IMG/VR virus record: IMGVR_UViG_3300038441_001119
Span: 62,001-126,000 of that record
Reading direction: 5' to 3' (one strand)
Length of the DNA stretch: 64,000 nucleotides
The position numbers were made by a program, and so were the translations under genes. This document shows, one piece after another, positions 1,163 to 54,147 of the stretch (the stretch's first letter is position 1; every line of letters starts with the position of its first letter). Under the pieces are notes generated by a model. It was not told where the DNA came from and made no database searches. It worked only from the letters and a program-made list of their open reading frames with translations.

Positions 1163-1200
1163 AAAAGAAAAAGGGAAGGGACCCTCACGAGTCCCTTCCC
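1163..1200 (-). terminator. intrinsic terminator
   Basis: 10-bp stem GGGAAGGGAC/GTCCCTTCCC followed by a U-rich tract on the minus strand. Confidence 0.75.
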
Positions 1201-3696: not shown

Positions 3697-3775
3697 TGGC
3701 GCCCGCGCTCGGATTCGAACCGAGAACCTTCTAGCCTAGGAACCAGACGCCTCTAACCGTTGAGGCTACGCGAGC
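3697..3775 (-). tRNA. atypical tRNA, Arg(CCT)-like, with 8-nt anticodon loop TTCCTAGG
   Basis: GCTCGCG/CGCGGGC acceptor, 5-bp D stem, TCTGG-TTCCTAGG-CTAGA, TTCGAAT, GCCA. Confidence 0.8.
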
Positions 3776-3813
3776 GATGAAGGTGGGTAGATTCTCACCT
3801 ACCCACCTAGAAG

Positions 3814-4806: not shown

Positions 4807-5683
4807 GTTCGTTGACTACGCCGTTAATGAATTCCGCCTCATCACCCCAAGAGGCGACGATAAGGGCACCGCCGGGAACAAAACGGAGGACGAGTGGATC
4901 CTTTGGGATCGGGAGCTTCTGGGTGGAAGCATCAACCTGTTCACGGAAACGCTTGACGAAGTCCTTGTCCTTGGTGAAGGCTGTTGGAGGAGCCACCACA
5001 AAGAACTCAGACCGGAACTGTTCGAAGAACTTGTTGAATGGCTTCAGATGGACTTTCATCCAACCCTCCTTGTTGACGGAGTTCGTAAGTTTGCGGCAAT
5101 CCAGCTCGCCGTTGAAGCAATCACGATTCTCGCTCATGATCCGGTTGAACGCCGTAACCGAAATACGACCGAAGTTGACATCGACGGTATTCTTGATGTC
5201 CTCGATCATCTTCTTGTGTGCCTTTTCGCACGCTTCTTGGTCCATCTCGAACTGTATGGGTGCGAGACCTGCCAGATGGTAGAGACCCTTCGTGTCAGGG
5301 AAGTCGCGCTCCTTGAGTTCGAAGTCGGTGATCAGTTTTGCCTGACTATCAGGAACACCACCTGCGTAGTATTCCGCCAAGTCGATGCTGAGCTTCATCG
5401 TGCTGATGGTAGCCAAAAGACCAGCCATAGGGATGAAACGGGAAGTAGGATACTTCGCGAGGTAGTGCTCGCGAAGTTCCGGATTGGCGACAAACTTACG
5501 ATGGAAATCGTTGAGTTTGATGGAAGCCGAGGATTTGAATCCGACGGCTGCGAGACGGTTGCACATCAGGGTTTCTTGGTGGAACCCCTCCGAGCGACCG
5601 TACACTTCGTAGTGGTTGATGAAACTGTCGATACGATCTGCTGAAGTGCCGACGGTTTTTGGATCAAGTGTTGGAGTTTGCAT
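4796..5683 (-). CDS. hypothetical protein, paralog of 3814..4806
   Basis: same motifs as neighbour. Confidence 0.8.
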   Translation of the reverse strand: MQTPTLDPKTVGTSADRIDSFINHYEVYGRSEGFHQETLMCNRLAAVGFKSSASIKLNDFHRKFVANPELREHYLAKYPTSRFIPMAGLLATISTMKLSIDLAEYYAGGVPDSQAKLITDFELKERDFPDTKGLYHLAGLAPIQFEMDQEACEKAHKKMIEDIKNTVDVNFGRISVTAFNRIMSENRDCFNGELDCRKLTNSVNKEGWMKVHLKPFNKFFEQFRSEFFVVAPPTAFTKDKDFVKRFREQVDASTQKLPIPKDPLVLRFVPGGALIVASWGDEAEFINGVVNELGL

Positions 5684-6233
5684 CTGGTAGTGTGGATCTA
5701 ATTAAATCCCGCACTTCCATCAGAATAAACCCGAGGTCATTTTCCCCGGGCCATTTCTCTGGTGAACGTGCATCGGGATGATCTGCAAGAAGACCCGTCC
5801 CATACCGTGTGTCGGTAGGATGAGCCTCGACGATAATGCTATCTCCCGTGTCCAGTAGATAGGACTGCAGGAGAGGATGCTGGGTGAACTTTTGCAAGTT
5901 CGCATGTGCGATGAATCCCCTATAAACGATATCCCATGCATTCTGTTCAAAGCCTTTGACCTCACGACCAATGGCTTTGATTTTCTGGGAATCGGGTTCC
6001 GCGAGAATACGATCCGCAGCTTCGTTGTCTCCGAAAAACCTCGCTTTCATCCACAGCATCAAATGCTTGGCTGATGCGAAGGTGATACCGGCATGTGTAA
6101 CATCGCATTGGAATCCCTGTGCGAGACAGGCATTGTCCAATTCGACGGGACTGGCAAGCTTGCTGCCGTAAAAGAAGGTGAAACTTGGTGTCTCACCTTC
6201 TTGCATTCTTCTAATCAATTTAGCCTTGTTCAT
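5664..6233 (-). CDS. NADAR (YbiA-like) family protein
   Basis: KARFFGD, KAIGREV, KFTQHP.L..YLLDTG, EAHPTDTRYGTG, GENDLGFILMEVR. Confidence 0.85.
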   Translation of the reverse strand: MNKAKLIRRMQEGETPSFTFFYGSKLASPVELDNACLAQGFQCDVTHAGITFASAKHLMLWMKARFFGDNEAADRILAEPDSQKIKAIGREVKGFEQNAWDIVYRGFIAHANLQKFTQHPLLQSYLLDTGDSIIVEAHPTDTRYGTGLLADHPDARSPEKWPGENDLGFILMEVRDLIRSTLPDANSNT

Positions 6234-6273
6234 GGTGGTTTCTGTTGGTAACGTTGGTTACGTTGGTTGGAAA

Positions 6274-6549
6274 TTAATCGTCGTCCATATGTTTGGTGGA
6301 CTCTATATGCCTGATCTCCTGCATTGTTTTTGCGTGGAGACTGTTGGGGTTACCTGCTTGCCTTGGATTACGACACATGGAGCAGGAGCAGGGTTTCCTG
6401 TTCTTGTGAAGGATAACAGCTCTCCGATGGATCTGTTCTGGAGTAAGCGATTTGAAGTAACGGTTGTTGATCTTCTCAAACTCCTCCATCCGGGCTACCA
6501 TCCGTTTTCGCTGATGGCGACGAAACGCTCTTCCGTATTCCGAGGACAT
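6274..6549 (-). CDS. small basic Zn-binding phage protein
   Basis: PCSCSMCRNPR motif. Confidence 0.65.
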   Translation of the reverse strand: MSSEYGRAFRRHQRKRMVARMEEFEKINNRYFKSLTPEQIHRRAVILHKNRKPCSCSMCRNPRQAGNPNSLHAKTMQEIRHIESTKHMDDD

Positions 6550-6551
6550 AT

Positions 6552-6938
6552 TTAGTCGAAGCTACCACCGCCTCCACCACCAGAGTCACCCCCGCTGAAA
6601 CTAGACCCGCCGCTATCGTAACTAGAACCGCCACTGCTATAGCCGCCGCTATCGTAACTAGAACCGCCGCTGTAATCGCTAGGCACAAAAGAAGTGCCAG
6701 AGCTATCACTATCATGCAGGGAAGAGCCAGAATGATGACCAGAATCTGAAGGGGCTTCGGGAGATCCTTCAGTTTTGTCTGATTCTTTGTGGTGGTGTCC
6801 TGACTCTGTGTGGATGAAGACAGGTACGTAGGGAGGGTGATACGATTCGGGTGACGGGGAACTGAATCCATGGTTACGACGGGGTGGTTGGTTCTGTTTC
6901 TTTTTGGAACCGAACAAGCGGTTGAAGGGCCAGATCAT
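6552..6938 (-). CDS. Gly/Ser-rich hypothetical protein
   Basis: low-complexity SGGSSYDSGG tail ending GGGGGGSFD. Confidence 0.7.
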   Translation of the reverse strand: MIWPFNRLFGSKKKQNQPPRRNHGFSSPSPESYHPPYVPVFIHTESGHHHKESDKTEGSPEAPSDSGHHSGSSLHDSDSSGTSFVPSDYSGGSSYDSGGYSSGGSSYDSGGSSFSGGDSGGGGGGSFD

Positions 6939-7164
6939 GTGTTTTGTTAATGGGTATGTATTGTGAACGCCAAGTGCACTTCAGATTGAAGCACAAGTAG
7001 TAACTGCCTGTTTTCATTTTCTCCATGAAGAATGCTTTCTCTTTGCATTCCGGACAATCGATCATGAAACAGGAGGGACAGACGTGCCACTTCTGCTTGG
7101 CGCATCCGGGTTTTAGTCCTCGCTCTCTATCGCAGAAGATACAGGTGGTGGGTTCTCCTTCCAT
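6874..7164 (-). CDS. Cys-rich (zinc-finger) hypothetical protein
   Basis: several CxxC pairs; overlaps both neighbours. Confidence 0.5.
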   Translation of the reverse strand: MEGEPTTCIFCDRERGLKPGCAKQKWHVCPSCFMIDCPECKEKAFFMEKMKTGSYYLCFNLKCTWRSQYIPINKTHDLALQPLVRFQKETEPTTPS

Positions 7165-7676
7165 GCGACAATAGGGCAATGTTTCTTGTACCAAGCCTTT
7201 ATACCGGCAACGAAGAAGTTATCTTCTGGTGGGCTGGCAAAGGAGTAACCTTGCTGCAGGCGGCGTTTCCGTTTCTCTCTCCATGTGGACACTTTGGTGA
7301 CAGCAAGGGAGATGGATATGATTGCCCCGCAGAACAAGGCCAGCGCGACTACAAAGGCCACCACACCTATGCCGAACTGCCACCAGTTAAGACCTTTTCC
7401 AAAAAAGAGCACGCCCATACAACTGCCGCCCATAGCTGCAACGAAGAGCAATACGAACAGGATGAAGTGGGCGGCGAGACTGGTACCGAAGTGTGTCCAG
7501 AATCCTCTCTTATACGGGGTACCGGAGTTCAGCCAAAGACCAAGCCATAGTACCGGGAAGGTGACTACATATAGGAGGGTTTTCCAGAAGTAAGGGCAGA
7601 AGTTTGTGGGTAGGGTATTATTTGGATTGACCCGTCGGTATAACCGGGCATGCCAAGCGTTGGAAGACAGATTCAT
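7113..7676 (-). CDS. multi-pass membrane protein
   Basis: three hydrophobic segments; NFCPYFW and HCPIV motifs. Confidence 0.75.
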   Translation of the reverse strand: MNLSSNAWHARLYRRVNPNNTLPTNFCPYFWKTLLYVVTFPVLWLGLWLNSGTPYKRGFWTHFGTSLAAHFILFVLLFVAAMGGSCMGVLFFGKGLNWWQFGIGVVAFVVALALFCGAIISISLAVTKVSTWREKRKRRLQQGYSFASPPEDNFFVAGIKAWYKKHCPIVAWKENPPPVSSAIESED

Positions 7677-8059
7677 TTTTCGGATAGAGTGAGGATGAGT
7701 GCTATGGTGATTTGACGTGGAGATGCAGAAAACGGATACAGGTCAGCTTGCATGGCTCCGGATTCTCGCTGCACCTTTTCAAGGTTTTCAGCGAATAGCT
7801 TTACCTTGTTCGGAAAGACCGATTTGTATGCCTCCATAGCGGGGTCATAGAAATCACTCGCACAAGGTGGGTGAGACGGATATCTCTCCACCGGCAGATG
7901 CTTGAACCGATCATGCTTCCATGCCTTTTCCTTCATGTCGCCTATGGGACCGAGATCATCGCACAGAGATCGCTCCACTTGAGTCCACCCGGTTTTCAAT
8001 GCGAGGATTGAATTGAGGTTGTGGTTTGGTTGCTTGTTCAGGTATTCAATGGTGTACAT
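7673..8059 (-). CDS. hypothetical protein (start reassigned to MYTIE)
   Basis: upstream extension would run through a strong hairpin. Confidence 0.6.
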   Translation of the reverse strand: MYTIEYLNKQPNHNLNSILALKTGWTQVERSLCDDLGPIGDMKEKAWKHDRFKHLPVERYPSHPPCASDFYDPAMEAYKSVFPNKVKLFAENLEKVQRESGAMQADLYPFSASPRQITIALILTLSEK

Positions 8060-8078
8060 AAAAAGATAAAAATGAGGT

Positions 8079-8110
8079 AAGTTCGGGGGTAGACAGCTAC
8101 CCCCGAACTT
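8079..8110. terminator. strong hairpin (terminator or RNA 3' end)
   Basis: AAGTTCGGGGGTAG-ACAG-CTACCCCCGAACTT, 14-bp stem. Confidence 0.6.
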
Positions 8111-8523
8111 TTTCACACACGCACAGTGGGAGTTAACCCGAAGATGCAGTTGCGCAGGTTCTAGCAGGCGACGACGTAACATTGACGGCCCCGACCTAAG
8201 AACTTGTCCTATCAATTTTTTCGACACAAGTTCAGCGACATCGCCCTCCCCTCACGGAACGACAATAGCGCCTACCTGCTGGCCGGATAGTTAGCGATCC
8301 ATTTTAACCTGTGGATACAGGAAGGCTGTACTTGGAACCCATTTGCGCAAAGGTTCCAAGTAGTCGTCAGCGCATACGTAGTAATGCCGTCTGTTCGTAC
8401 ACCACTGCAGTGTCGGAACTATACACGATATTAGAGCCATTGACCCGGGTTCATCGGTATTGGGCGGAGGTGCCGAGCGGGATGCTGGGCGGAAAGGAAA
8501 GTGACGACACACCTTCCTGGCTC
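8111..8523 (-). ncRNA. candidate large structured ncRNA
   Basis: no convincing ORF; begins at the promoter motif; nested helices (GAGCCA/TGGCTC, TACTTGGAACC/GGTTCCAAGTA, GAACTTGT/ACAAGTTC, CAGGTT/AACCTG, AGCAGG/CCTGCT, CAGTGG/CCACTG). Confidence 0.5.
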
Positions 8524-8556
8524 ATTAATATATAGCACCGCAGTGCTTATATTTGC
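8521..8556 (-). promoter_or_regulatory. bipartite promoter motif, copy 1
   Basis: GCAA-N14-GTGCTATATA-TTAA-TGAG. Confidence 0.7.
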
Positions 8557-8572
8557 TTGGTGTGTATTAGGT

Positions 8573-8616
8573 AAAAAGAAGTACCCACGTCCCCTTGCGG
8601 GGACGAAGGTACTTCT
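8573..8616 (-). terminator. intrinsic terminator
   Basis: AGAAGTACC..CGTCCCC/GGGGACG..GGTACTTCT hairpin + U tract. Confidence 0.7.
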
Positions 8617-8645
8617 CTCCATGGATGTTGACTGATACCCGGAAA

Positions 8646-8855
8646 TTAACGGCGGTCGTAGTTGCGAGGAGGCAGTTCAGCCTCGTGGCGGACGGCGTCG
8701 ACGAATTCGCGTTCTTTCTTCTCGCGATATTCCTCACGGCGTTCACGTTCGCGGTCGACGACTTTCTCTTCCTCCGTACGTGGGTCGCACGAGCTGAGGG
8801 CGAGGGCAGTGGAAGCAGCTGCAACGAGCAGCATGATATGTTTGTTCAGTTTCAT
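8646..8855 (-). CDS. small lipoprotein
   Basis: signal peptide with lipobox LSSC, charged tail. Confidence 0.7.
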   Translation of the reverse strand: MKLNKHIMLLVAAASTALALSSCDPRTEEEKVVDRERERREEYREKKEREFVDAVRHEAELPPRNYDRR

Positions 8856-19641: not shown

Positions 19642-21561
19642 TTATCTATGTTTCCTGTTCCTTACTTCGTCCAAGTCCAGCTTACCCGCAAGGATGTCTT
19701 CCATCTCTTGTCGCTTTAATCCAAGCAAATGCCGGATTGATTCTGCAAACGCAGGATTAGGGATGCGGAAGGGGAGGGTGATCTTGCCCCATCCGTTATT
19801 ACCCACAATCGCAGGGTCGAATAACCCTCCAGTGACAGGTGCCATGTTGTTCAGATTGAGAAGTTCCCCTTTCTGAATCTCGATGGCGTTCTTGTCATCC
19901 ACGTCTTTGTCAGTGGTAGGAGCAAGGCGCAGAATACCTTTACCAACATTACGAGGAGTAATACCGGCACCTACCATTGTGTTCATAGTCTTGTCCCATG
20001 AGAAAGGGACGCCCGGTTTAGCAGGAGTCAATCCCATACGCAGTGCTCTCCAGTACTCATCGTTTTGTTGACCGCGAAGAGTAATACCTTCCCTCAGGTT
20101 ATTGTAGGCACCAGAGGAGAGCATAACGTTGGACTCCAGTCCGGAAAGTCGTTTGGAACCACCGCCTTCTCCCGAACCTTTCGCAGGTTGACGGAACAAG
20201 TCGTAGCCACCCTGACCGCGAGAAGAAGCCTTACTCGACGAGGTATGGTGAAGTTTGAGCATGTAGGCGTTACCTACAAGCACAGGGTTCTCAAGAAATT
20301 GATTGGTCTCTGGATCGAAGATTTCCTCTTCGTCAGGGATTCCCGCTTCTTCCAGTTTTTGAAGAACGGTTTCGTACCACTTCTCGCCGGGTTTGGTGAA
20401 TCCGGGAAGTTTGATGGGCTTACCTTGAGCGGCAGCCACCTTACCCAACATGATCTCGTACAACAGGGAGTTGTTGGTACGCGATGGAATGGAAAGAGGA
20501 TTAAGAAGAACATCCAAAGGCTGACCATCCTTGGTGCGTGGCATCTTCTCATCAGGGATCACAAGGGATACGGTACCCTTCTGACCAGTACGGTAGACAA
20601 CCTTGTCACCCTCTTTGGTAGGGGCGTAGGCTTTGGTAACCACTTTGACACCTTTGGGTGTGTGGAAAACATCAACAACTTCAGCAGGATACTCTTCTTC
20701 CCAGACGGACGAAGAATCACCACGTGCCTGAGACATCGTTTTCGTGAGCTTGCCGACGTTTACACCGGCAGACGAAATAACACGAGGTCTGGTGGAAAGA
20801 ATGATAGGATCGCCGGGGTCTAGGATCTGACCTTTCTGAACAACTCCACGTTCATCCAGTTTAGCGAGTTGTTTCTTGTGGAACTTCTCAGGGAACAGGG
20901 AGCGGAAATGACCAAGGCCACCCTTGATGTCCCGGTCATACTCCTGTTCGTGTGTCTCCATGTGTTCGCTGACCATATTGTCTGCGAAACCTTTACGAAG
21001 GACGATAGCGTCGTCCATGGAGTAACCTTTATATGGAACCACAGCCACACGGGTATTCATTCCCATCGCCGCTGTGCCGTTGTCGTCCGTATAGTTGGAC
21101 GTAGCCAGCAGACCTCCTGCAGTGAACTTGTCTCCTACCTTTACCTTGGAAGTGTTATGGATACCAGACTTACGGTTGAAGCTCTGGTTATTGTAGATTG
21201 CTCGTTTCTTTTTCTCTCCAGTGGCGTTCTTGTAATGAATGTAATCAGGCGTGACTTCAGTCACCTCGCCATCTTCATCCGCAAACACAGCTCCCAGATC
21301 TTTACCGAGCTTTTCATCGAAGGAGAACCCACCATCGTCGGTGGTATCAAGGTTCTGCACCCATGGAGCTTCACGGTTGCGTAACGGCATAGCTTGGTTG
21401 TCGAATCGAGCGCCGTAGAATAGACGCGGACCCTGAACACCAGACTGAATAGGAATATGATTGATGTGAGTACCAAACAGATTCTCGTGAGAGATCAATT
21501 CGTAATCAATTTCATCATCATCAAAGTCCTGAATCTTACCGTTCCTGTAACCTACCGGCAT
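19642..21561 (-). CDS. rpoB: RNA polymerase beta subunit C-terminal part, fused to a beta-prime-like N-terminal segment
   Basis: GARFDNQAMPL, PYKGYSMDDAI, GDKVVYRTGQKG, DVLLNPLSIPSR, YMLKLHH, GGSKRLSGLE; tail GGLFDPAIVG..WGKITLP resembles RpoC DGLFCxxIFG..MGHIELA. Confidence 0.9.
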   Translation of the reverse strand: MPVGYRNGKIQDFDDDEIDYELISHENLFGTHINHIPIQSGVQGPRLFYGARFDNQAMPLRNREAPWVQNLDTTDDGGFSFDEKLGKDLGAVFADEDGEVTEVTPDYIHYKNATGEKKKRAIYNNQSFNRKSGIHNTSKVKVGDKFTAGGLLATSNYTDDNGTAAMGMNTRVAVVPYKGYSMDDAIVLRKGFADNMVSEHMETHEQEYDRDIKGGLGHFRSLFPEKFHKKQLAKLDERGVVQKGQILDPGDPIILSTRPRVISSAGVNVGKLTKTMSQARGDSSSVWEEEYPAEVVDVFHTPKGVKVVTKAYAPTKEGDKVVYRTGQKGTVSLVIPDEKMPRTKDGQPLDVLLNPLSIPSRTNNSLLYEIMLGKVAAAQGKPIKLPGFTKPGEKWYETVLQKLEEAGIPDEEEIFDPETNQFLENPVLVGNAYMLKLHHTSSSKASSRGQGGYDLFRQPAKGSGEGGGSKRLSGLESNVMLSSGAYNNLREGITLRGQQNDEYWRALRMGLTPAKPGVPFSWDKTMNTMVGAGITPRNVGKGILRLAPTTDKDVDDKNAIEIQKGELLNLNNMAPVTGGLFDPAIVGNNGWGKITLPFRIPNPAFAESIRHLLGLKRQEMEDILAGKLDLDEVRNRKHR

Positions 21562-41701: not shown

Positions 41702-41747
41702 AAAAGAAAACCTCCCCAATTACGCATTGTTAAGAGGCGGGGGAGGT
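41702..41747 (-). terminator. intrinsic terminator
   Basis: ACCTCCCC/GGGGAGGT stem + U tract. Confidence 0.55.
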
Positions 41748-52790: not shown

Positions 52791-53338
52791 ACGATCTCAA
52801 AGCCAATCTCCAGTGGGGCTGGAGCAGCCAATGGGGTTTTAGGACGGACCGACTCCAGAAGCTTGTCGATTGCTTTCAGAGACTTGGCGTCGGTCAGTAG
52901 ATGCTGGATTTGCTCCGCCTCACCGTCCAATGCTTCCTTGATCTTAAGCTGTATCTGCTTGGGATTCCATTGAGGCAGCTTGTTAGTGAGATCAACGATC
53001 TGCTTCTGCAGCTTATCAACACGCTCCCCTGCTGGGATCGGTTTCAATGCGATCAGGTAACCCTTGTTTGTGTTCGTGCTGAAGTTGTAGTTATTCTGGA
53101 TAGATTGCACCAGCGTAACTCTTTCGCTGGATAGATACTCCTTGGCGTCTGCCTCGGCAGCCGCCATCAGCTGTCCACGCAATGCCGCGATTTGGGTGGA
53201 GGCCGCGTCGTATTCCCTTTTAAATTCCTCCTGTGCACGCTGGAACATGGCCTTTGCAACCACCGTACGGGACGGGGTTGGTTCCATGTTCTTTGGGATG
53301 ATTGCAGCCTCTTGTTTAGTGACGATTCGTTTTGCCAT
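52787..53338 (-). CDS. helical hypothetical protein
   Basis: 183 aa. Confidence 0.7.
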   Translation of the reverse strand: MAKRIVTKQEAAIIPKNMEPTPSRTVVAKAMFQRAQEEFKREYDAASTQIAALRGQLMAAAEADAKEYLSSERVTLVQSIQNNYNFSTNTNKGYLIALKPIPAGERVDKLQKQIVDLTNKLPQWNPKQIQLKIKEALDGEAEQIQHLLTDAKSLKAIDKLLESVRPKTPLAAPAPLEIGFEIV

Positions 53339-53373
53339 GTTGCTCTTTGAAATGTCAGAGCAACCACGTTGGA

Positions 53374-54147
53374 TTACTCTGGAAGTTTGACTACCTTGCC
53401 GTCTAGATCGGCAGGGCTTCTATATTCCAGTTTACCGGTTCTCCTGTTACGGAAGAGCTGGTAAAGACGTCCATCACTACCAAACTTGGTTCCCCATGTA
53501 AGACGGGTGTCAATACCCGCACGTGAGGATTCAGGGCCAGAGAGGTTGTCAATAAACCCGAAGGAGCTGGCATGGACCGCCTGCATTTCAGGAGTGATCG
53601 ATTCGTCACTGGCAATACCACCGGGACCCATCTGGGTGATCCGGCGTGCAGACTCAATGAGCTGCATCGGGTTAATCTCCTCCAGAGGGGAAGACAGTGG
53701 GTTGTTTACCAACTGCTTCTCCGTATATTCGTCAAACGCAAGGGGTCCCAAGACAGACAGATTCTTTCTGTGGGCTGCCATACGCAGCAGTCTTTTACGG
53801 ACTTGACCTGCATCCGTGCGAATACGTTGTGAGAGGAGTTTGTCCGTGGTGAAGACTTTCTTGAAGGCTTGACTGTCCCGTTCATCGGTGTCAGCAAGCC
53901 CTCGGTTGACCGCTAGGAGCTTCTCGGTAGCCGCAAGGATACCGTTGATACCGACAGGCACATACGGCTCTTGGTCGGCGTCATAATCGTAGTCGTTGGC
54001 GCGTTCTATAGGCTTCTCTGATTTCTCAAGAGTAGTCTTAATCGCTGCAGGTGGTTGCGGGGGACTTACGGGTTCCGGCACGTAAGCGTTCTTCTGCATA
54101 TCGACTCTGTCAGCGAGCCAACTTTTGAATTTGTTTTTAGAGTCCAT
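53374..54147 (-). CDS. rpoB: RNA polymerase beta subunit middle part (fork loop / Rif-pocket region)
   Basis: INPMQLIESARRITQMGPGGI..VHASSFGFID..GPESSRAG matches [38 protein letters not shown]. Confidence 0.85.
   Translation of the reverse strand: MDSKNKFKSWLADRVDMQKNAYVPEPVSPPQPPAAIKTTLEKSEKPIERANDYDYDADQEPYVPVGINGILAATEKLLAVNRGLADTDERDSQAFKKVFTTDKLLSQRIRTDAGQVRKRLLRMAAHRKNLSVLGPLAFDEYTEKQLVNNPLSSPLEEINPMQLIESARRITQMGPGGIASDESITPEMQAVHASSFGFIDNLSGPESSRAGIDTRLTWGTKFGSDGRLYQLFRNRRTGKLEYRSPADLDGKVVKLPE

What the first reader, a model, noticed from the sequence alone, without database searches (positions are those of the whole stretch)
8079..8523. Candidate ~410-440-nt highly structured ncRNA with its own promoter
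Seen: a gap without a credible ORF in a gene-dense genome. It is bounded by a terminator and promoter motif upstream and a 14-bp hairpin downstream. The 5' GAGCCA pairs with TGGCTC ~90 nt later, followed by nested long-range helices (CAGTGG/CCACTG, CAGGTT/AACCTG, AGCAGG/CCTGCT) and local hairpins. It lies beside the tRNA/tmRNA cluster, where large phage ncRNAs often sit. I could not match RNase P, SRP, 6S or group I/II intron signatures.
Basis: partly seen in the sequence, partly recalled or inferred. Interest (0 to 1): 0.65.

Follow-up and report, generated by a model that had tools for sequence, protein, structure and literature searches.

The report
Orphan noncoding transcription unit, soil jumbo phage
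Between two terminators of a 212-kb soil phage lies a promoter-driven stretch of about 450 bases on the minus strand that encodes no protein; it is probably a real untranslated RNA or long leader, but nothing shows it to be unusually structured, conserved or a member of any known RNA family.

Summary
The gap is real and lies on the minus strand. It has four parts in order.
- An upstream terminator at 8616..8577.
- A promoter at 8556..8523.
- About 410 nt with no coding signal.
- A perfect 14-bp hairpin at 8110..8079 with a T-rich tail. This tail runs straight into the start codon of an orphan gene at 8059.

The promoter is the strongest new evidence. It is the joint-best copy of a motif, GCA-N15-GnGCTATATA-N4-TG, that occurs 21 times in this genome, always on the minus strand.

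The "highly structured" claim is not supported.
- Without the terminator hairpin, the fold energy is ordinary for this genome (GC-adjusted z -0.95).
- Rfam gives no match.

Covariation cannot be tested.
- Both downstream genes (P0001, P0002) are orphans.
- All other assemblies of this phage are identical.
- The closest relatives, at 73% to about 50% RNA polymerase beta identity, show no sequence or model match.

Best reading: an untranslated leader RNA ended by a leaky terminator, which gates read-through into the downstream operon. Rival readings are a new trans-acting RNA, a decayed gene cassette, a small protein and a DNA site. Interest is modest.

The parts
8577..8616 (-). Upstream terminator. 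It ends the unit that carries the tmRNA, two tRNAs and the 69-aa lipoprotein-like gene 8855..8646.
   Evidence: Inverted repeat of 18 nt, 89% complementary, with a 4-nt loop. On the minus strand it is followed by TTTTTACCTAAT. The T-rich tail matches the other terminators of this genome.
8523..8556 (-). Promoter of the phage-wide class GCA-N15-GnGCTATATA-N4-TG. GCAA is at 8556..8553, GCTATATA at 8536..8529 and TG at 8524..8523. The start of transcription is inferred near 8523, give or take a few bases.
   Evidence: Pattern search: 5 matches in the window against 0.10 expected, all on the minus strand. Weight matrix: 21 sites on the minus strand, none on the plus strand, and this site scores 31.5 bits, tied for best. 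The start site is inferred from spacing, not measured.
8113..8523 (-). Body of the predicted untranslated RNA, about 411 nt.
   Evidence: No coding signal in any frame. No Rfam match at E up to 10. No paralogue in the genome. MFE is -142.3 kcal/mol on the minus strand and -129.1 on the plus strand.
8495..8518 (-). 5'-proximal stem-loop AGGAAGGUG / CACUUUCCU: 9 bp with a 6-nt loop.
   Evidence: Mean pair probability 0.93. In almost all of the 21 sites of this promoter class, a hairpin starts at the conserved TG. Their 40-mers fold better than genome 40-mers (mean -8.5 against -6.5 kcal/mol, Mann-Whitney p = 0.003).
8434..8523 (-). Predicted domain I: a 90-nt branched domain closed by GAGCC / GGCUC.
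   Evidence: The closing helix has probability 0.95. This is a prediction only. A single-sequence covariance model, R1, found only chance-level matches in 13 related phage records.
8118..8427 (-). Predicted domain II: a long imperfect rod (8427..8365 paired with 8187..8118) that carries a branched core.
   Evidence: Helix probabilities are 0.72-0.92. This is a prediction only. Model R2 of the core (8369..8183) matched nothing but itself.
8329..8362 (-). Strongest internal hairpin: an 11-12 bp perfect stem and a 12-nt loop UUUGCGCAAAUG that contains a 10-nt self-complementary word.
   Evidence: Inverted repeat I3. Pair probability 0.98. The palindromic loop can be read directly from the sequence. 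Its meaning is unknown.
8079..8110 (-). Downstream terminator hairpin: 14 bp perfect, 8 G-C pairs, loop CUGU.
   Evidence: Pair probability 0.98. Only two of the 25 perfect hairpins of at least 9 bp in the genome have a longer stem.
8060..8078 (-). T-rich terminator tail ACCTCATTTTTATCTTTTT, running into the ATG at 8059.
   Evidence: It has the same style as other terminator tails in the genome, for example cattcctcttttttatc and cacttcttcttttttatgt. The U run starts 6 nt after the stem, so termination is probably incomplete (inference).
7673..8059 (-). First downstream gene, P0001 (128 aa, orphan). Its stop overlaps the start of P0002 (7676..7113, membrane protein, phrog_944).
   Evidence: The language-model look-alikes of P0001 are viral hypothetical proteins (score 0.94). 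No copy of this promoter motif lies between the terminator and this gene, and the next site downstream is at about -1380.
8291..8512 (-). I judge it not to be a gene.
   Evidence: The coding score is negative in its frame. No Pfam match passes threshold (best E = 0.037). Its start context is GC-rich and atypical. None of the three gene callers called it.

Best explanation
This is an untranslated, promoter-to-terminator transcription unit on the minus strand of a 212-kb soil phage.

**Proposed mechanism**
1. Transcription starts near 8523 from one of the phage's 21 copies of the promoter GCA-N15-GnGCTATATA-N4-TG.
2. Like the other transcripts of this class, the RNA opens with a 5' stem-loop. 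By analogy with 5'-terminal stem-loops that protect bacterial mRNAs from 5'-end-dependent decay, this probably stabilises it.
3. About 410 nt of non-coding RNA follow.
4. Most polymerases stop at the 14-bp hairpin 8110..8079 and its U-rich tail, releasing an RNA of about 445-460 nt.
5. The polymerases that read through make the only class-promoter-driven mRNA for P0001, P0002 and the genes below them.

The element therefore works as a long leader plus a leaky terminator that sets how much of the downstream operon is expressed. The terminated leader accumulates as a by-product or carries an added function.

**Shown:** strand, promoter class, absence of coding signal, both hairpins, and the absence of this promoter motif before P0001.
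**Inferred:** the start site, termination efficiency, read-through, and any regulatory input.
For: - **Promoter.** 5 window matches against 0.10 expected. 21 matrix sites, all on the gene strand, with this one tied for best at 31.5 bits.
- **5' hairpin.** It starts at the conserved TG in almost all 21 sites.
- **Terminators.** The genome's perfect hairpins carry the same T-rich tails. Several are followed directly by a start codon with no promoter, so read-through is the normal arrangement here.
- **No coding signal.** None in six frames, and none under TAG=Q or table 4. The JGI caller places no gene here, and ENA and Logan only extend P0001 upstream through the terminator hairpin.
- **Downstream promoter.** The next matrix site below 8536 is at about -1380, so roughly 9 kb of genes depend on this promoter or on an unrecognised class.
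- **Fold asymmetry.** The minus strand folds better than the plus strand: z -2.75 against -0.51, and MFE -142.3 against -129.1.
Against: - No RNA data exist. Only DNA soil metagenomes hold this phage, so neither the start, the end nor the read-through has been observed.
- The U run is 6 nt from the stem. On the plus strand the same hairpin looks like a canonical terminator, so its efficiency and direction are uncertain.
- A 410-nt leader is far longer than those of the other promoters of this class, which lie tens to about 220 nt from the next ORF. Nothing explains why so much RNA would be needed.
- The phage has its own multisubunit RNA polymerase. Other promoter classes that I did not recognise could drive P0001 independently.
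- No conservation evidence of any kind is available.
Confidence: 0.45

Rival explanations
1. A free-standing, trans-acting structured RNA of a new family. The roughly 450-nt RNA would fold into domain I plus a rod-and-core domain II and act on its own, like the large phage RNAs found beside tRNA islands. It might form homodimers through the palindromic loop UUUGCGCAAA.
For: - It has its own strong promoter and terminator.
- It sits next to the tmRNA and tRNAs.
- Folding is strand-asymmetric.
- Several helices are well defined, with probabilities of 0.93-0.98.
- A 10-nt self-complementary word lies in the 12-nt loop of the best hairpin.
- GOLLD and ROOL are phage RNAs, often near tRNA islands, that assemble through kissing loops (PMC12286853).
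Against: - The fold energy is ordinary for this genome (z -0.95).
- There is no Rfam match, GOLLD, ROOL, 6S and RNase P included.
- There is no homologue anywhere, so covariation is zero by default.
- The tmRNA loci of relatives G002 and G010 have no such gap.
- The palindrome is a post hoc observation.
Confidence: 0.25
2. Evolutionary debris: a promoter-terminator cassette whose gene has decayed or been deleted. It would still be transcribed but would have no function of its own, in a fast-turnover accessory region.
For: - The surrounding genes are orphans with weak coding scores, P0001 and P0002 at about 0-0.13.
- Gene content below the RNA polymerase gene differs in every relative examined.
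- The region is not conserved even in the 73% relative.
- Its structure is no better than the genome background.
Against: - No frame shows patches of positive coding score, as a recent pseudogene would.
- No protein family matches any frame.
- ORFs from the two relative loci tested (L048 and L049) give no significant hit by tblastn.
- Phage genomes rarely keep 400 nt of useless DNA behind their best promoter.
Confidence: 0.2
3. A small protein gene: the 73-codon GTG ORF 8512..8291, or its 49-codon ATG version starting at 8440.
For: It is the only minus-strand ORF above 30 codons that lies wholly inside the unit. It also lies downstream of a strong promoter.
Against: - The coding score is negative.
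- The start context is GC-rich, unlike the A/T-rich context of 126 sure starts.
- No family match passes threshold.
- No gene caller called it.
- Its start lies inside the 5' stem-loop.
Confidence: 0.05
4. A DNA-level element, such as an operator or other protein-binding site or a replication or packaging signal, centred on the 34-bp palindrome 8329-8362.
For: There is a perfect 11-bp inverted repeat with an inner TTTGCGCAAA palindrome.
Against: - It is a single copy with no iterons or repeated sites.
- It lies 160 nt or more downstream of the promoter, not over it.
- There is no strand switch here, since all genes run the same way.
Confidence: 0.05

Closest known systems
GOLLD (RF01998) and ROOL (RF03087), large ornate RNAs of phages and prophages
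   Same: It is phage-encoded, several hundred nucleotides long, non-coding, and placed beside a tRNA/tmRNA island. A self-complementary hairpin loop could in principle mediate RNA-RNA contacts, as kissing loops do in those RNAs (PMC12286853).
   Different: There is no covariance-model match at E up to 10. It is shorter, at about 410-460 nt against about 580 and over 800. There are no homologues, so none of the conserved pseudoknots or bridges can be shown. Its predicted fold is no better than the genome background.
Transcription-attenuation leaders (riboswitch, T-box and other promoter-leader-terminator-gene arrangements)
   Same: The order of parts matches: promoter, long untranslated leader, strong hairpin with a U-rich tail, then the first gene 20 nt later with no copy of this promoter motif in between.
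   Different: No known aptamer or T-box model matches. The leader is longer than usual. The only candidate anti-terminator pairing (8197..8189 with 8088..8080, 8 of 9 bases) is at chance level by my count. Terminators followed directly by genes are common in this genome, so this one need not be regulated.
5'-terminal stabilising stem-loops of bacterial and phage mRNAs (established knowledge, for example the ompA 5' UTR)
   Same: A hairpin begins at the conserved TG, at or next to the inferred first transcribed base, in almost all 21 promoters of the class, this one included.
   Different: This is a feature of the whole promoter class. It says nothing specific about this RNA, and its function has not been tested.
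Stable RNAs of unknown function in phage tRNA clusters (T4 species 1 and 2 RNAs; from memory, not checked here)
   Same: A non-coding transcript encoded next to phage tRNA genes.
   Different: The T4 RNAs are much shorter, at about 120-140 nt, and are processed out of the tRNA precursor. This unit has its own promoter and is separated from the tRNAs by a gene and a terminator.

Membership tests
GOLLD RNA (RF01998) | Match to the family covariance model | tested here: not met
   cmscan of 7900-8800 on both strands at E up to 10 lists no GOLLD match. There is none at gathering score in the window either.
ROOL RNA (RF03087) | Match to the family covariance model | tested here: not met
   No ROOL match at E up to 10.
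GOLLD/ROOL-like ornate phage RNAs (loose class) | Phage-encoded and near a tRNA island | tested here: met
   The record is a 212-kb virus. tRNAs lie at 9124-9291 and a tmRNA at 9396-9856 on the same strand.
GOLLD/ROOL-like ornate phage RNAs (loose class) | Conserved, covarying complex secondary structure | not testable with these tools
   No homologue was found in the phages collection, viral contigs, metagenome contigs, genome contigs or 16 related phage records and loci. Other assemblies of the phage are 100% identical.
Known riboswitch, T-box or leader families in Rfam | Match to any cis-regulatory covariance model | tested here: not met
   Only chance-level microRNA, CRISPR-repeat and sRNA rows, all far below their gathering scores.
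Attenuation-type leader (architecture only) | Promoter, untranslated leader, terminator and then a gene, with no intervening promoter | tested here: met
   Promoter at 8556..8523, hairpin at 8110..8079 plus tail, ATG at 8059, and no copy of this promoter motif in between.
Attenuation-type leader (architecture only) | Alternative anti-terminator structure or ligand-dependent switch | tested here: inconclusive
   The only candidate is an 8-of-9 match between 8197..8189 and the 3' arm of the terminator (I10). About 0.5 such matches are expected by chance by my count.
6S RNA, RNase P RNA, SRP RNA, group I/II introns, small ribozymes | Match to the family covariance model | tested here: not met
   None is listed at E up to 10 on either strand.
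Promoter class of this phage (GCA-N15-GnGCTATATA-N4-TG) | Both motif halves at exact spacing, on the gene strand, followed by a hairpin | tested here: met
   Zero mismatches to the pattern. Scores 31.5 bits, tied for best of 21. The hairpin energy of the first 40 nt is -12.9 kcal/mol.
Intrinsic terminator | G+C-rich hairpin followed at once by a U run | tested here: inconclusive
   The 14-bp stem with 8 G-C pairs is met. On the minus strand the U run begins 6 nt after the stem. The consensus scan still lists it, and other terminators of this genome have the same offset tails.

The most novel reading that the evidence does not exclude
The unit encodes a new class of large phage RNA of about 410-450 nt, placed beside the tmRNA/tRNA island. 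It would fold into a two-domain structure and self-associate through the palindromic loop UUUGCGCAAA of hairpin 8362..8329. That would make it a small cousin of the RNA-only assemblies formed by ROOL, GOLLD and OLE. So far it is known from a single soil phage lineage.
Probability: 0.07. Interest if true: 0.7.

Novelty: new member of a known kind. Interest (0 to 1): 0.3.

Why it matters
If the unit is transcribed as predicted, it is a clean case of a phage spending about 450 nt behind one of its best promoters on RNA that is never translated, next to its tmRNA and tRNAs. It would be worth a Northern blot or probing experiment once a host or a cloned fragment is available.

The more solid gain is the regulatory grammar of an uncultured jumbo-phage lineage.
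- A strand-specific promoter motif with 21 copies.
- A 5' stem-loop that starts at the conserved TG, at or next to the inferred first transcribed base.
- A characteristic terminator with an offset T-rich tail.
- No Shine-Dalgarno signal upstream of start codons.

These features allow transcription units to be drawn on this genome and on its relatives. As a structured-RNA discovery the case is weak. With no relatives there is no covariation, and thermodynamics alone does not separate it from ordinary sequence.

Tried and rejected
**Family and coding checks**
- Rfam at gathering score and at E up to 10: nothing relevant.
- Alternative codes TAG=Q and table 4 were tried only because one tRNA loop contains CUA. 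No ORF opens, and I claim no recoding.
- Pfam on the short ORFs: nothing passes threshold.

**Searches for relatives or paralogues**
- Similar DNA in 50,697 phage records: none.
- An exact 28-nt hairpin word in viral contigs: none.
- A 22-nt word in metagenome contigs found only a second, identical assembly of the same phage. In genome contigs it found nothing.
- The downstream genes P0001 and P0002 as anchors: both are orphans among 5.8 billion proteins.
- The nearby HD-domain protein (10327-11016) against 1.84 billion representatives: no relative above 40% identity.
- The three assemblies fetched that carry P0002 are identical in the gap.
- Public reads: six soil DNA runs and no RNA run. The contigs laid are identical pieces of the same phage, with no variants in the gap.
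- RNA polymerase beta relatives at 73%, 69% and 66% identity (L007-L009) and 13 IMG/VR records at about 50% or less show no nhmmer, BLAST or covariance-model match.
- The one weak R1 hit (18.8 bits in G006, with a copy in G005) rests on a 14-nt word inside a P/E-rich coding stretch. It has no protein-level similarity, so I judge it chance.
- tmRNA loci of relatives G002 and G010 have no comparable gap.
- Paralogues or over-represented words inside the genome: none.

**Other**

Full report
**Setting**

The window is bases 62001-126000 of a 212,352-bp virus record rated complete. The only public runs that hold it are soil DNA metagenomes. Almost all genes lie on the minus strand.

The phage encodes a multisubunit RNA polymerase beta subunit at 19642-21561. 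Its nearest named relatives share only 32% identity in that protein: Salmonella phage Arash and Vibrio phages D69, D148 and D181. Metagenomes hold a large clade of roughly 200-kb relatives at 55-73%.

**What is at the coordinates**

Read on the minus strand, the order is as follows.
1. The stop of a 69-aa lipoprotein-like gene, 8855..8646.
2. An 18-bp imperfect hairpin at 8616..8577, followed by TTTTTAC.
3. An A/T-rich stretch ending in GGTGCTATATATTAATG.
4. About 410 nt with no long ORF.
5. A perfect 14-bp hairpin at 8110..8079.
6. The tail ACCTCATTTTTATCTTTTT.
7. The ATG at 8059 of an orphan 128-aa gene, P0001. Its stop overlaps the start of P0002, a membrane protein of phrog_944.

The tmRNA (9396-9856, 103 bits) and two tRNAs (9124-9199 and 9214-9291) lie just upstream on the same strand.

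**It is non-coding**

- I trained a dicodon log-odds model on 111 long ORFs of this genome. It gives 0.30 +/- 0.15 for real coding windows and -0.43 +/- 0.14 for wrong frames.
- Across 8080-8530 the best of six frames is -0.12 to -0.27.
- The JGI caller leaves 8060-8645 empty. The ENA and Logan callers only extend P0001 upstream to 8182, through the terminator hairpin.
- The 73-codon GTG ORF 8512..8291 has no family match that passes threshold. Its start context is GC-rich, unlike the A/T-rich context of 126 unambiguous starts, and its start lies inside the 5' stem-loop.
- One tRNA loop contains CUA, so I listed ORFs under TAG=Q and table 4. Nothing opens, and I claim no recoding.

**The promoter is real**

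- K-mer enrichment in intergenic DNA picked out GTGCTATATA.
- Aligning its copies gave a two-part motif at fixed spacing, GCA-N15-GnGCTATATA-N4-TG.
- In the window, the pattern GCAA-N16-GCTATATA with at most one mismatch occurs 5 times against 0.10 expected, always on the minus strand.
- A weight matrix finds 21 sites at 12 bits or more on the minus strand and none on the plus strand. The site at 8556..8529 scores 31.5 bits, tied for best.
- In almost all 21 sites a hairpin begins at the conserved TG. Their first 40 nt fold better than genome 40-mers (mean -8.5 against -6.5 kcal/mol, p = 0.003).
- The 5' stem-loop AGGAAGGUG/CACUUUCCU (8518..8495) therefore belongs to the promoter class, not to this RNA in particular.
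- The start of transcription near 8523 is inferred from spacing to the TATATA element. It was not measured.

**The terminators fit the genome's style**

- The 25 perfect hairpins of at least 9 bp on the minus strand are often followed, after a few bases, by tails such as TTCTTTTTTAT or TTTACCT.
- Both hairpins that flank the unit fit this style.
- Several such hairpins are followed directly by a start codon with no promoter, so read-through is the normal arrangement in this phage.
- No site of this promoter class lies between 8079 and P0001. The next site downstream is at about -1380.
- P0001, P0002 and roughly 9 kb of further genes therefore depend on read-through from 8536, or on a promoter class I did not recognise.

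**Is it highly structured?**

- Against dinucleotide shuffles, the minus strand of 8113-8573 has z = -2.75 and the plus strand has z = -0.51. This asymmetry favours a minus-strand RNA.
- Against native windows of the same strand and length, the picture is ordinary.
  - With the terminator hairpin included, the GC-adjusted z is -1.8, ranking 12th of 459 windows.
  - Without it, z is -0.95 (17th percentile). Positional entropy sits at the 16th percentile.
- The ensemble does contain well-defined pieces:
  - domain I, closed by GAGCC/GGCUC (probability 0.95);
  - hairpin 8362..8329 (0.98);
  - a junction at 8286..8191 with two hairpins (0.85-0.98);
  - a long imperfect rod pairing 8427..8365 with 8187..8118 (0.72-0.92).
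The other three have probabilities of 0.028, 0.001 and 0.003. About 24 perfect 6-bp matches are expected by chance in 445 nt.

**Known families**

No Rfam family matches at E up to 10 on either strand. That search covers GOLLD, ROOL, 6S, RNase P, SRP, introns, ribozymes and riboswitches.

**Homologues**

- Similar DNA in the phages collection: none.
- Exact hairpin words: none in viral or genome contigs. In metagenome contigs, only an identical second assembly of the same phage.
- P0001 and P0002 have no relatives at all among 5.8 billion proteins.
- The nearby HD-domain protein has no relative above 40% identity among 1.84 billion representatives.
- All assemblies and read contigs of this phage are identical in the gap.
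- Through RNA polymerase beta I reached loci at 73%, 69% and 66% identity (L007-L009) and 13 IMG/VR records at about 50% or less.
- nhmmer, BLAST and two single-sequence covariance models (R1 for domain I, R2 for the core) found nothing beyond the phage itself.
- One weak R1 hit rests on a 14-nt word inside a proline- and glutamate-rich coding stretch of G005 and G006. It has no protein-level similarity, so I judge it chance.
- Gene order below the polymerase gene differs in every relative. The tmRNA loci of G002 and G010 have no comparable gap.

**Interpretation**

*Shown:* a strand-specific class promoter, an ORF-free and coding-signal-free stretch of 410 nt, a strong hairpin with the genome's usual terminator tail, and a gene 20 nt further on with no copy of this promoter motif of its own.

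*Inferred:* transcripts start near 8523. Many end near 8065, giving an untranslated RNA of about 450 nt. The rest continue into P0001 and P0002.

I therefore read the element as a long leader with a leaky terminator that gates a downstream accessory operon (confidence 0.45).

The rivals are as follows.
- A free-standing structured RNA of a new family (0.25). The own promoter and terminator, the tRNA-island position (as for GOLLD and ROOL: PMC12286853) and the palindromic loop speak for it. The ordinary fold energy and total lack of conservation speak against it.
- A decayed gene cassette (0.2).
- A small protein (0.05).
- A DNA site (0.05).

**Unexplained detail**

The 12-nt loop of the best hairpin contains the 10-nt self-complementary word UUUGCGCAAA. 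It could mediate loop-loop dimerisation of an RNA, or it could be a protein-binding palindrome in DNA.

**Verdict**

The unit is very probably a real non-coding transcription unit. The claim that it is a highly structured ncRNA is unproven and is not favoured by the thermodynamic controls. It belongs to no known RNA family and currently has no relatives. Interest is 0.3.

Noticed in passing
window 3697-3775 (-), 9124-9199 (-), 9214-9291 (-): Three of the five tRNA genes in the window have 8-nt anticodon loops (UUCCUAGG, GUGAAAAC, AUUUUGGC) and an encoded CCA. ARAGORN reports 4-base anticodons CCUA, GAAA and UUUG, and Rfam's tRNA model scores them 44.6-53.3 bits. They may be quadruplet-decoding or frameshift-suppressor tRNAs, or simply odd loops.
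   Followed up: partly
window 8536, 10301, 12648, 19612, 28725, 36855, 39338, 42329 (position of the G of GCTATATA, minus strand); 13 more sites elsewhere in G000: A phage-wide promoter class, GCA-N15-GnGCTATATA-N4-TG, has 21 sites on the minus strand and none on the plus strand. In almost all sites a hairpin starts at the conserved TG, usually UGAGRG...CYCUCA.
   Followed up: yes
genome-wide; in the window for example 1200..1173, 3808..3781, 8110..8079, 57718..57686: The phage's terminators are perfect hairpins of 9-16 bp followed, after a few bases, by tails such as TTCTTTTTTAT or TTTACCT. Several run straight into a start codon preceded by CACACC or ACACA, with no promoter.
   Followed up: partly
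window 41710-41746 (-); also G000:C1:674-712 (-): There is an abiF RNA motif (RF03085) at 38.8 bits, just above the cut-off of 37. A weaker copy (27.3 bits) sits beside the tRNA cluster at the start of the genome.
   Followed up: no
G000:C1 about 53300-53790, minus strand (outside the window; L051:500-990): A second promoter-to-terminator stretch without a gene. It has a perfect TTGACA-17-TATAAT promoter, about 470 nt of non-coding sequence and a 13-bp terminator hairpin. The window covering it has the second most negative GC-adjusted fold energy of 459 (z -2.66). It has no Rfam match.
   Followed up: partly
window 9396-9856 (-): The phage tmRNA is unusually long at 461 nt. Rfam finds it (103 bits) but ARAGORN does not. 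The tag reading frame ends in ...VVALAA.
   Followed up: no
whole genome G000: There is no Shine-Dalgarno signal upstream of 126 unambiguous ATG starts. Information content is near zero and the context is only A/T-rich. This hints at a host that does not rely on Shine-Dalgarno pairing.
   Followed up: partly
L007:18112-19256: The closest relative found (RNA polymerase beta 73% identical, a 56.6-kb ENA contig) has its own stretch of about 1.1 kb without called genes. It is unrelated in sequence to the candidate and ends at a scaffold gap of Ns. It may hold one small basic ORF.
   Followed up: partly
window 6234-8059: The genes just downstream of the unit (P0001, P0002 and the ORFs at 6476-7194) have much weaker coding scores (about 0 to 0.13) than the genome average of 0.30. 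P0001 and P0002, the two I searched, have no relatives. This suggests a recently acquired or fast-evolving accessory block.
   Followed up: partly
relatives P0160, P0191, P0215, P0229 and others; L008:16774-20226: Several relatives carry intein or LAGLIDADG insertions in their RNA polymerase beta and beta-prime genes (PF14528, PF14890). The window's own beta gene has none.
   Followed up: no
window 5664-6233 (-) and 11009-11494 (-): Two NADAR-domain genes (PF08719) bracket the tmRNA/tRNA/candidate region. The first scores E = 2.7e-38. The second, at 33.9 bits, is just under the cut-off of 35.1.
   Followed up: no
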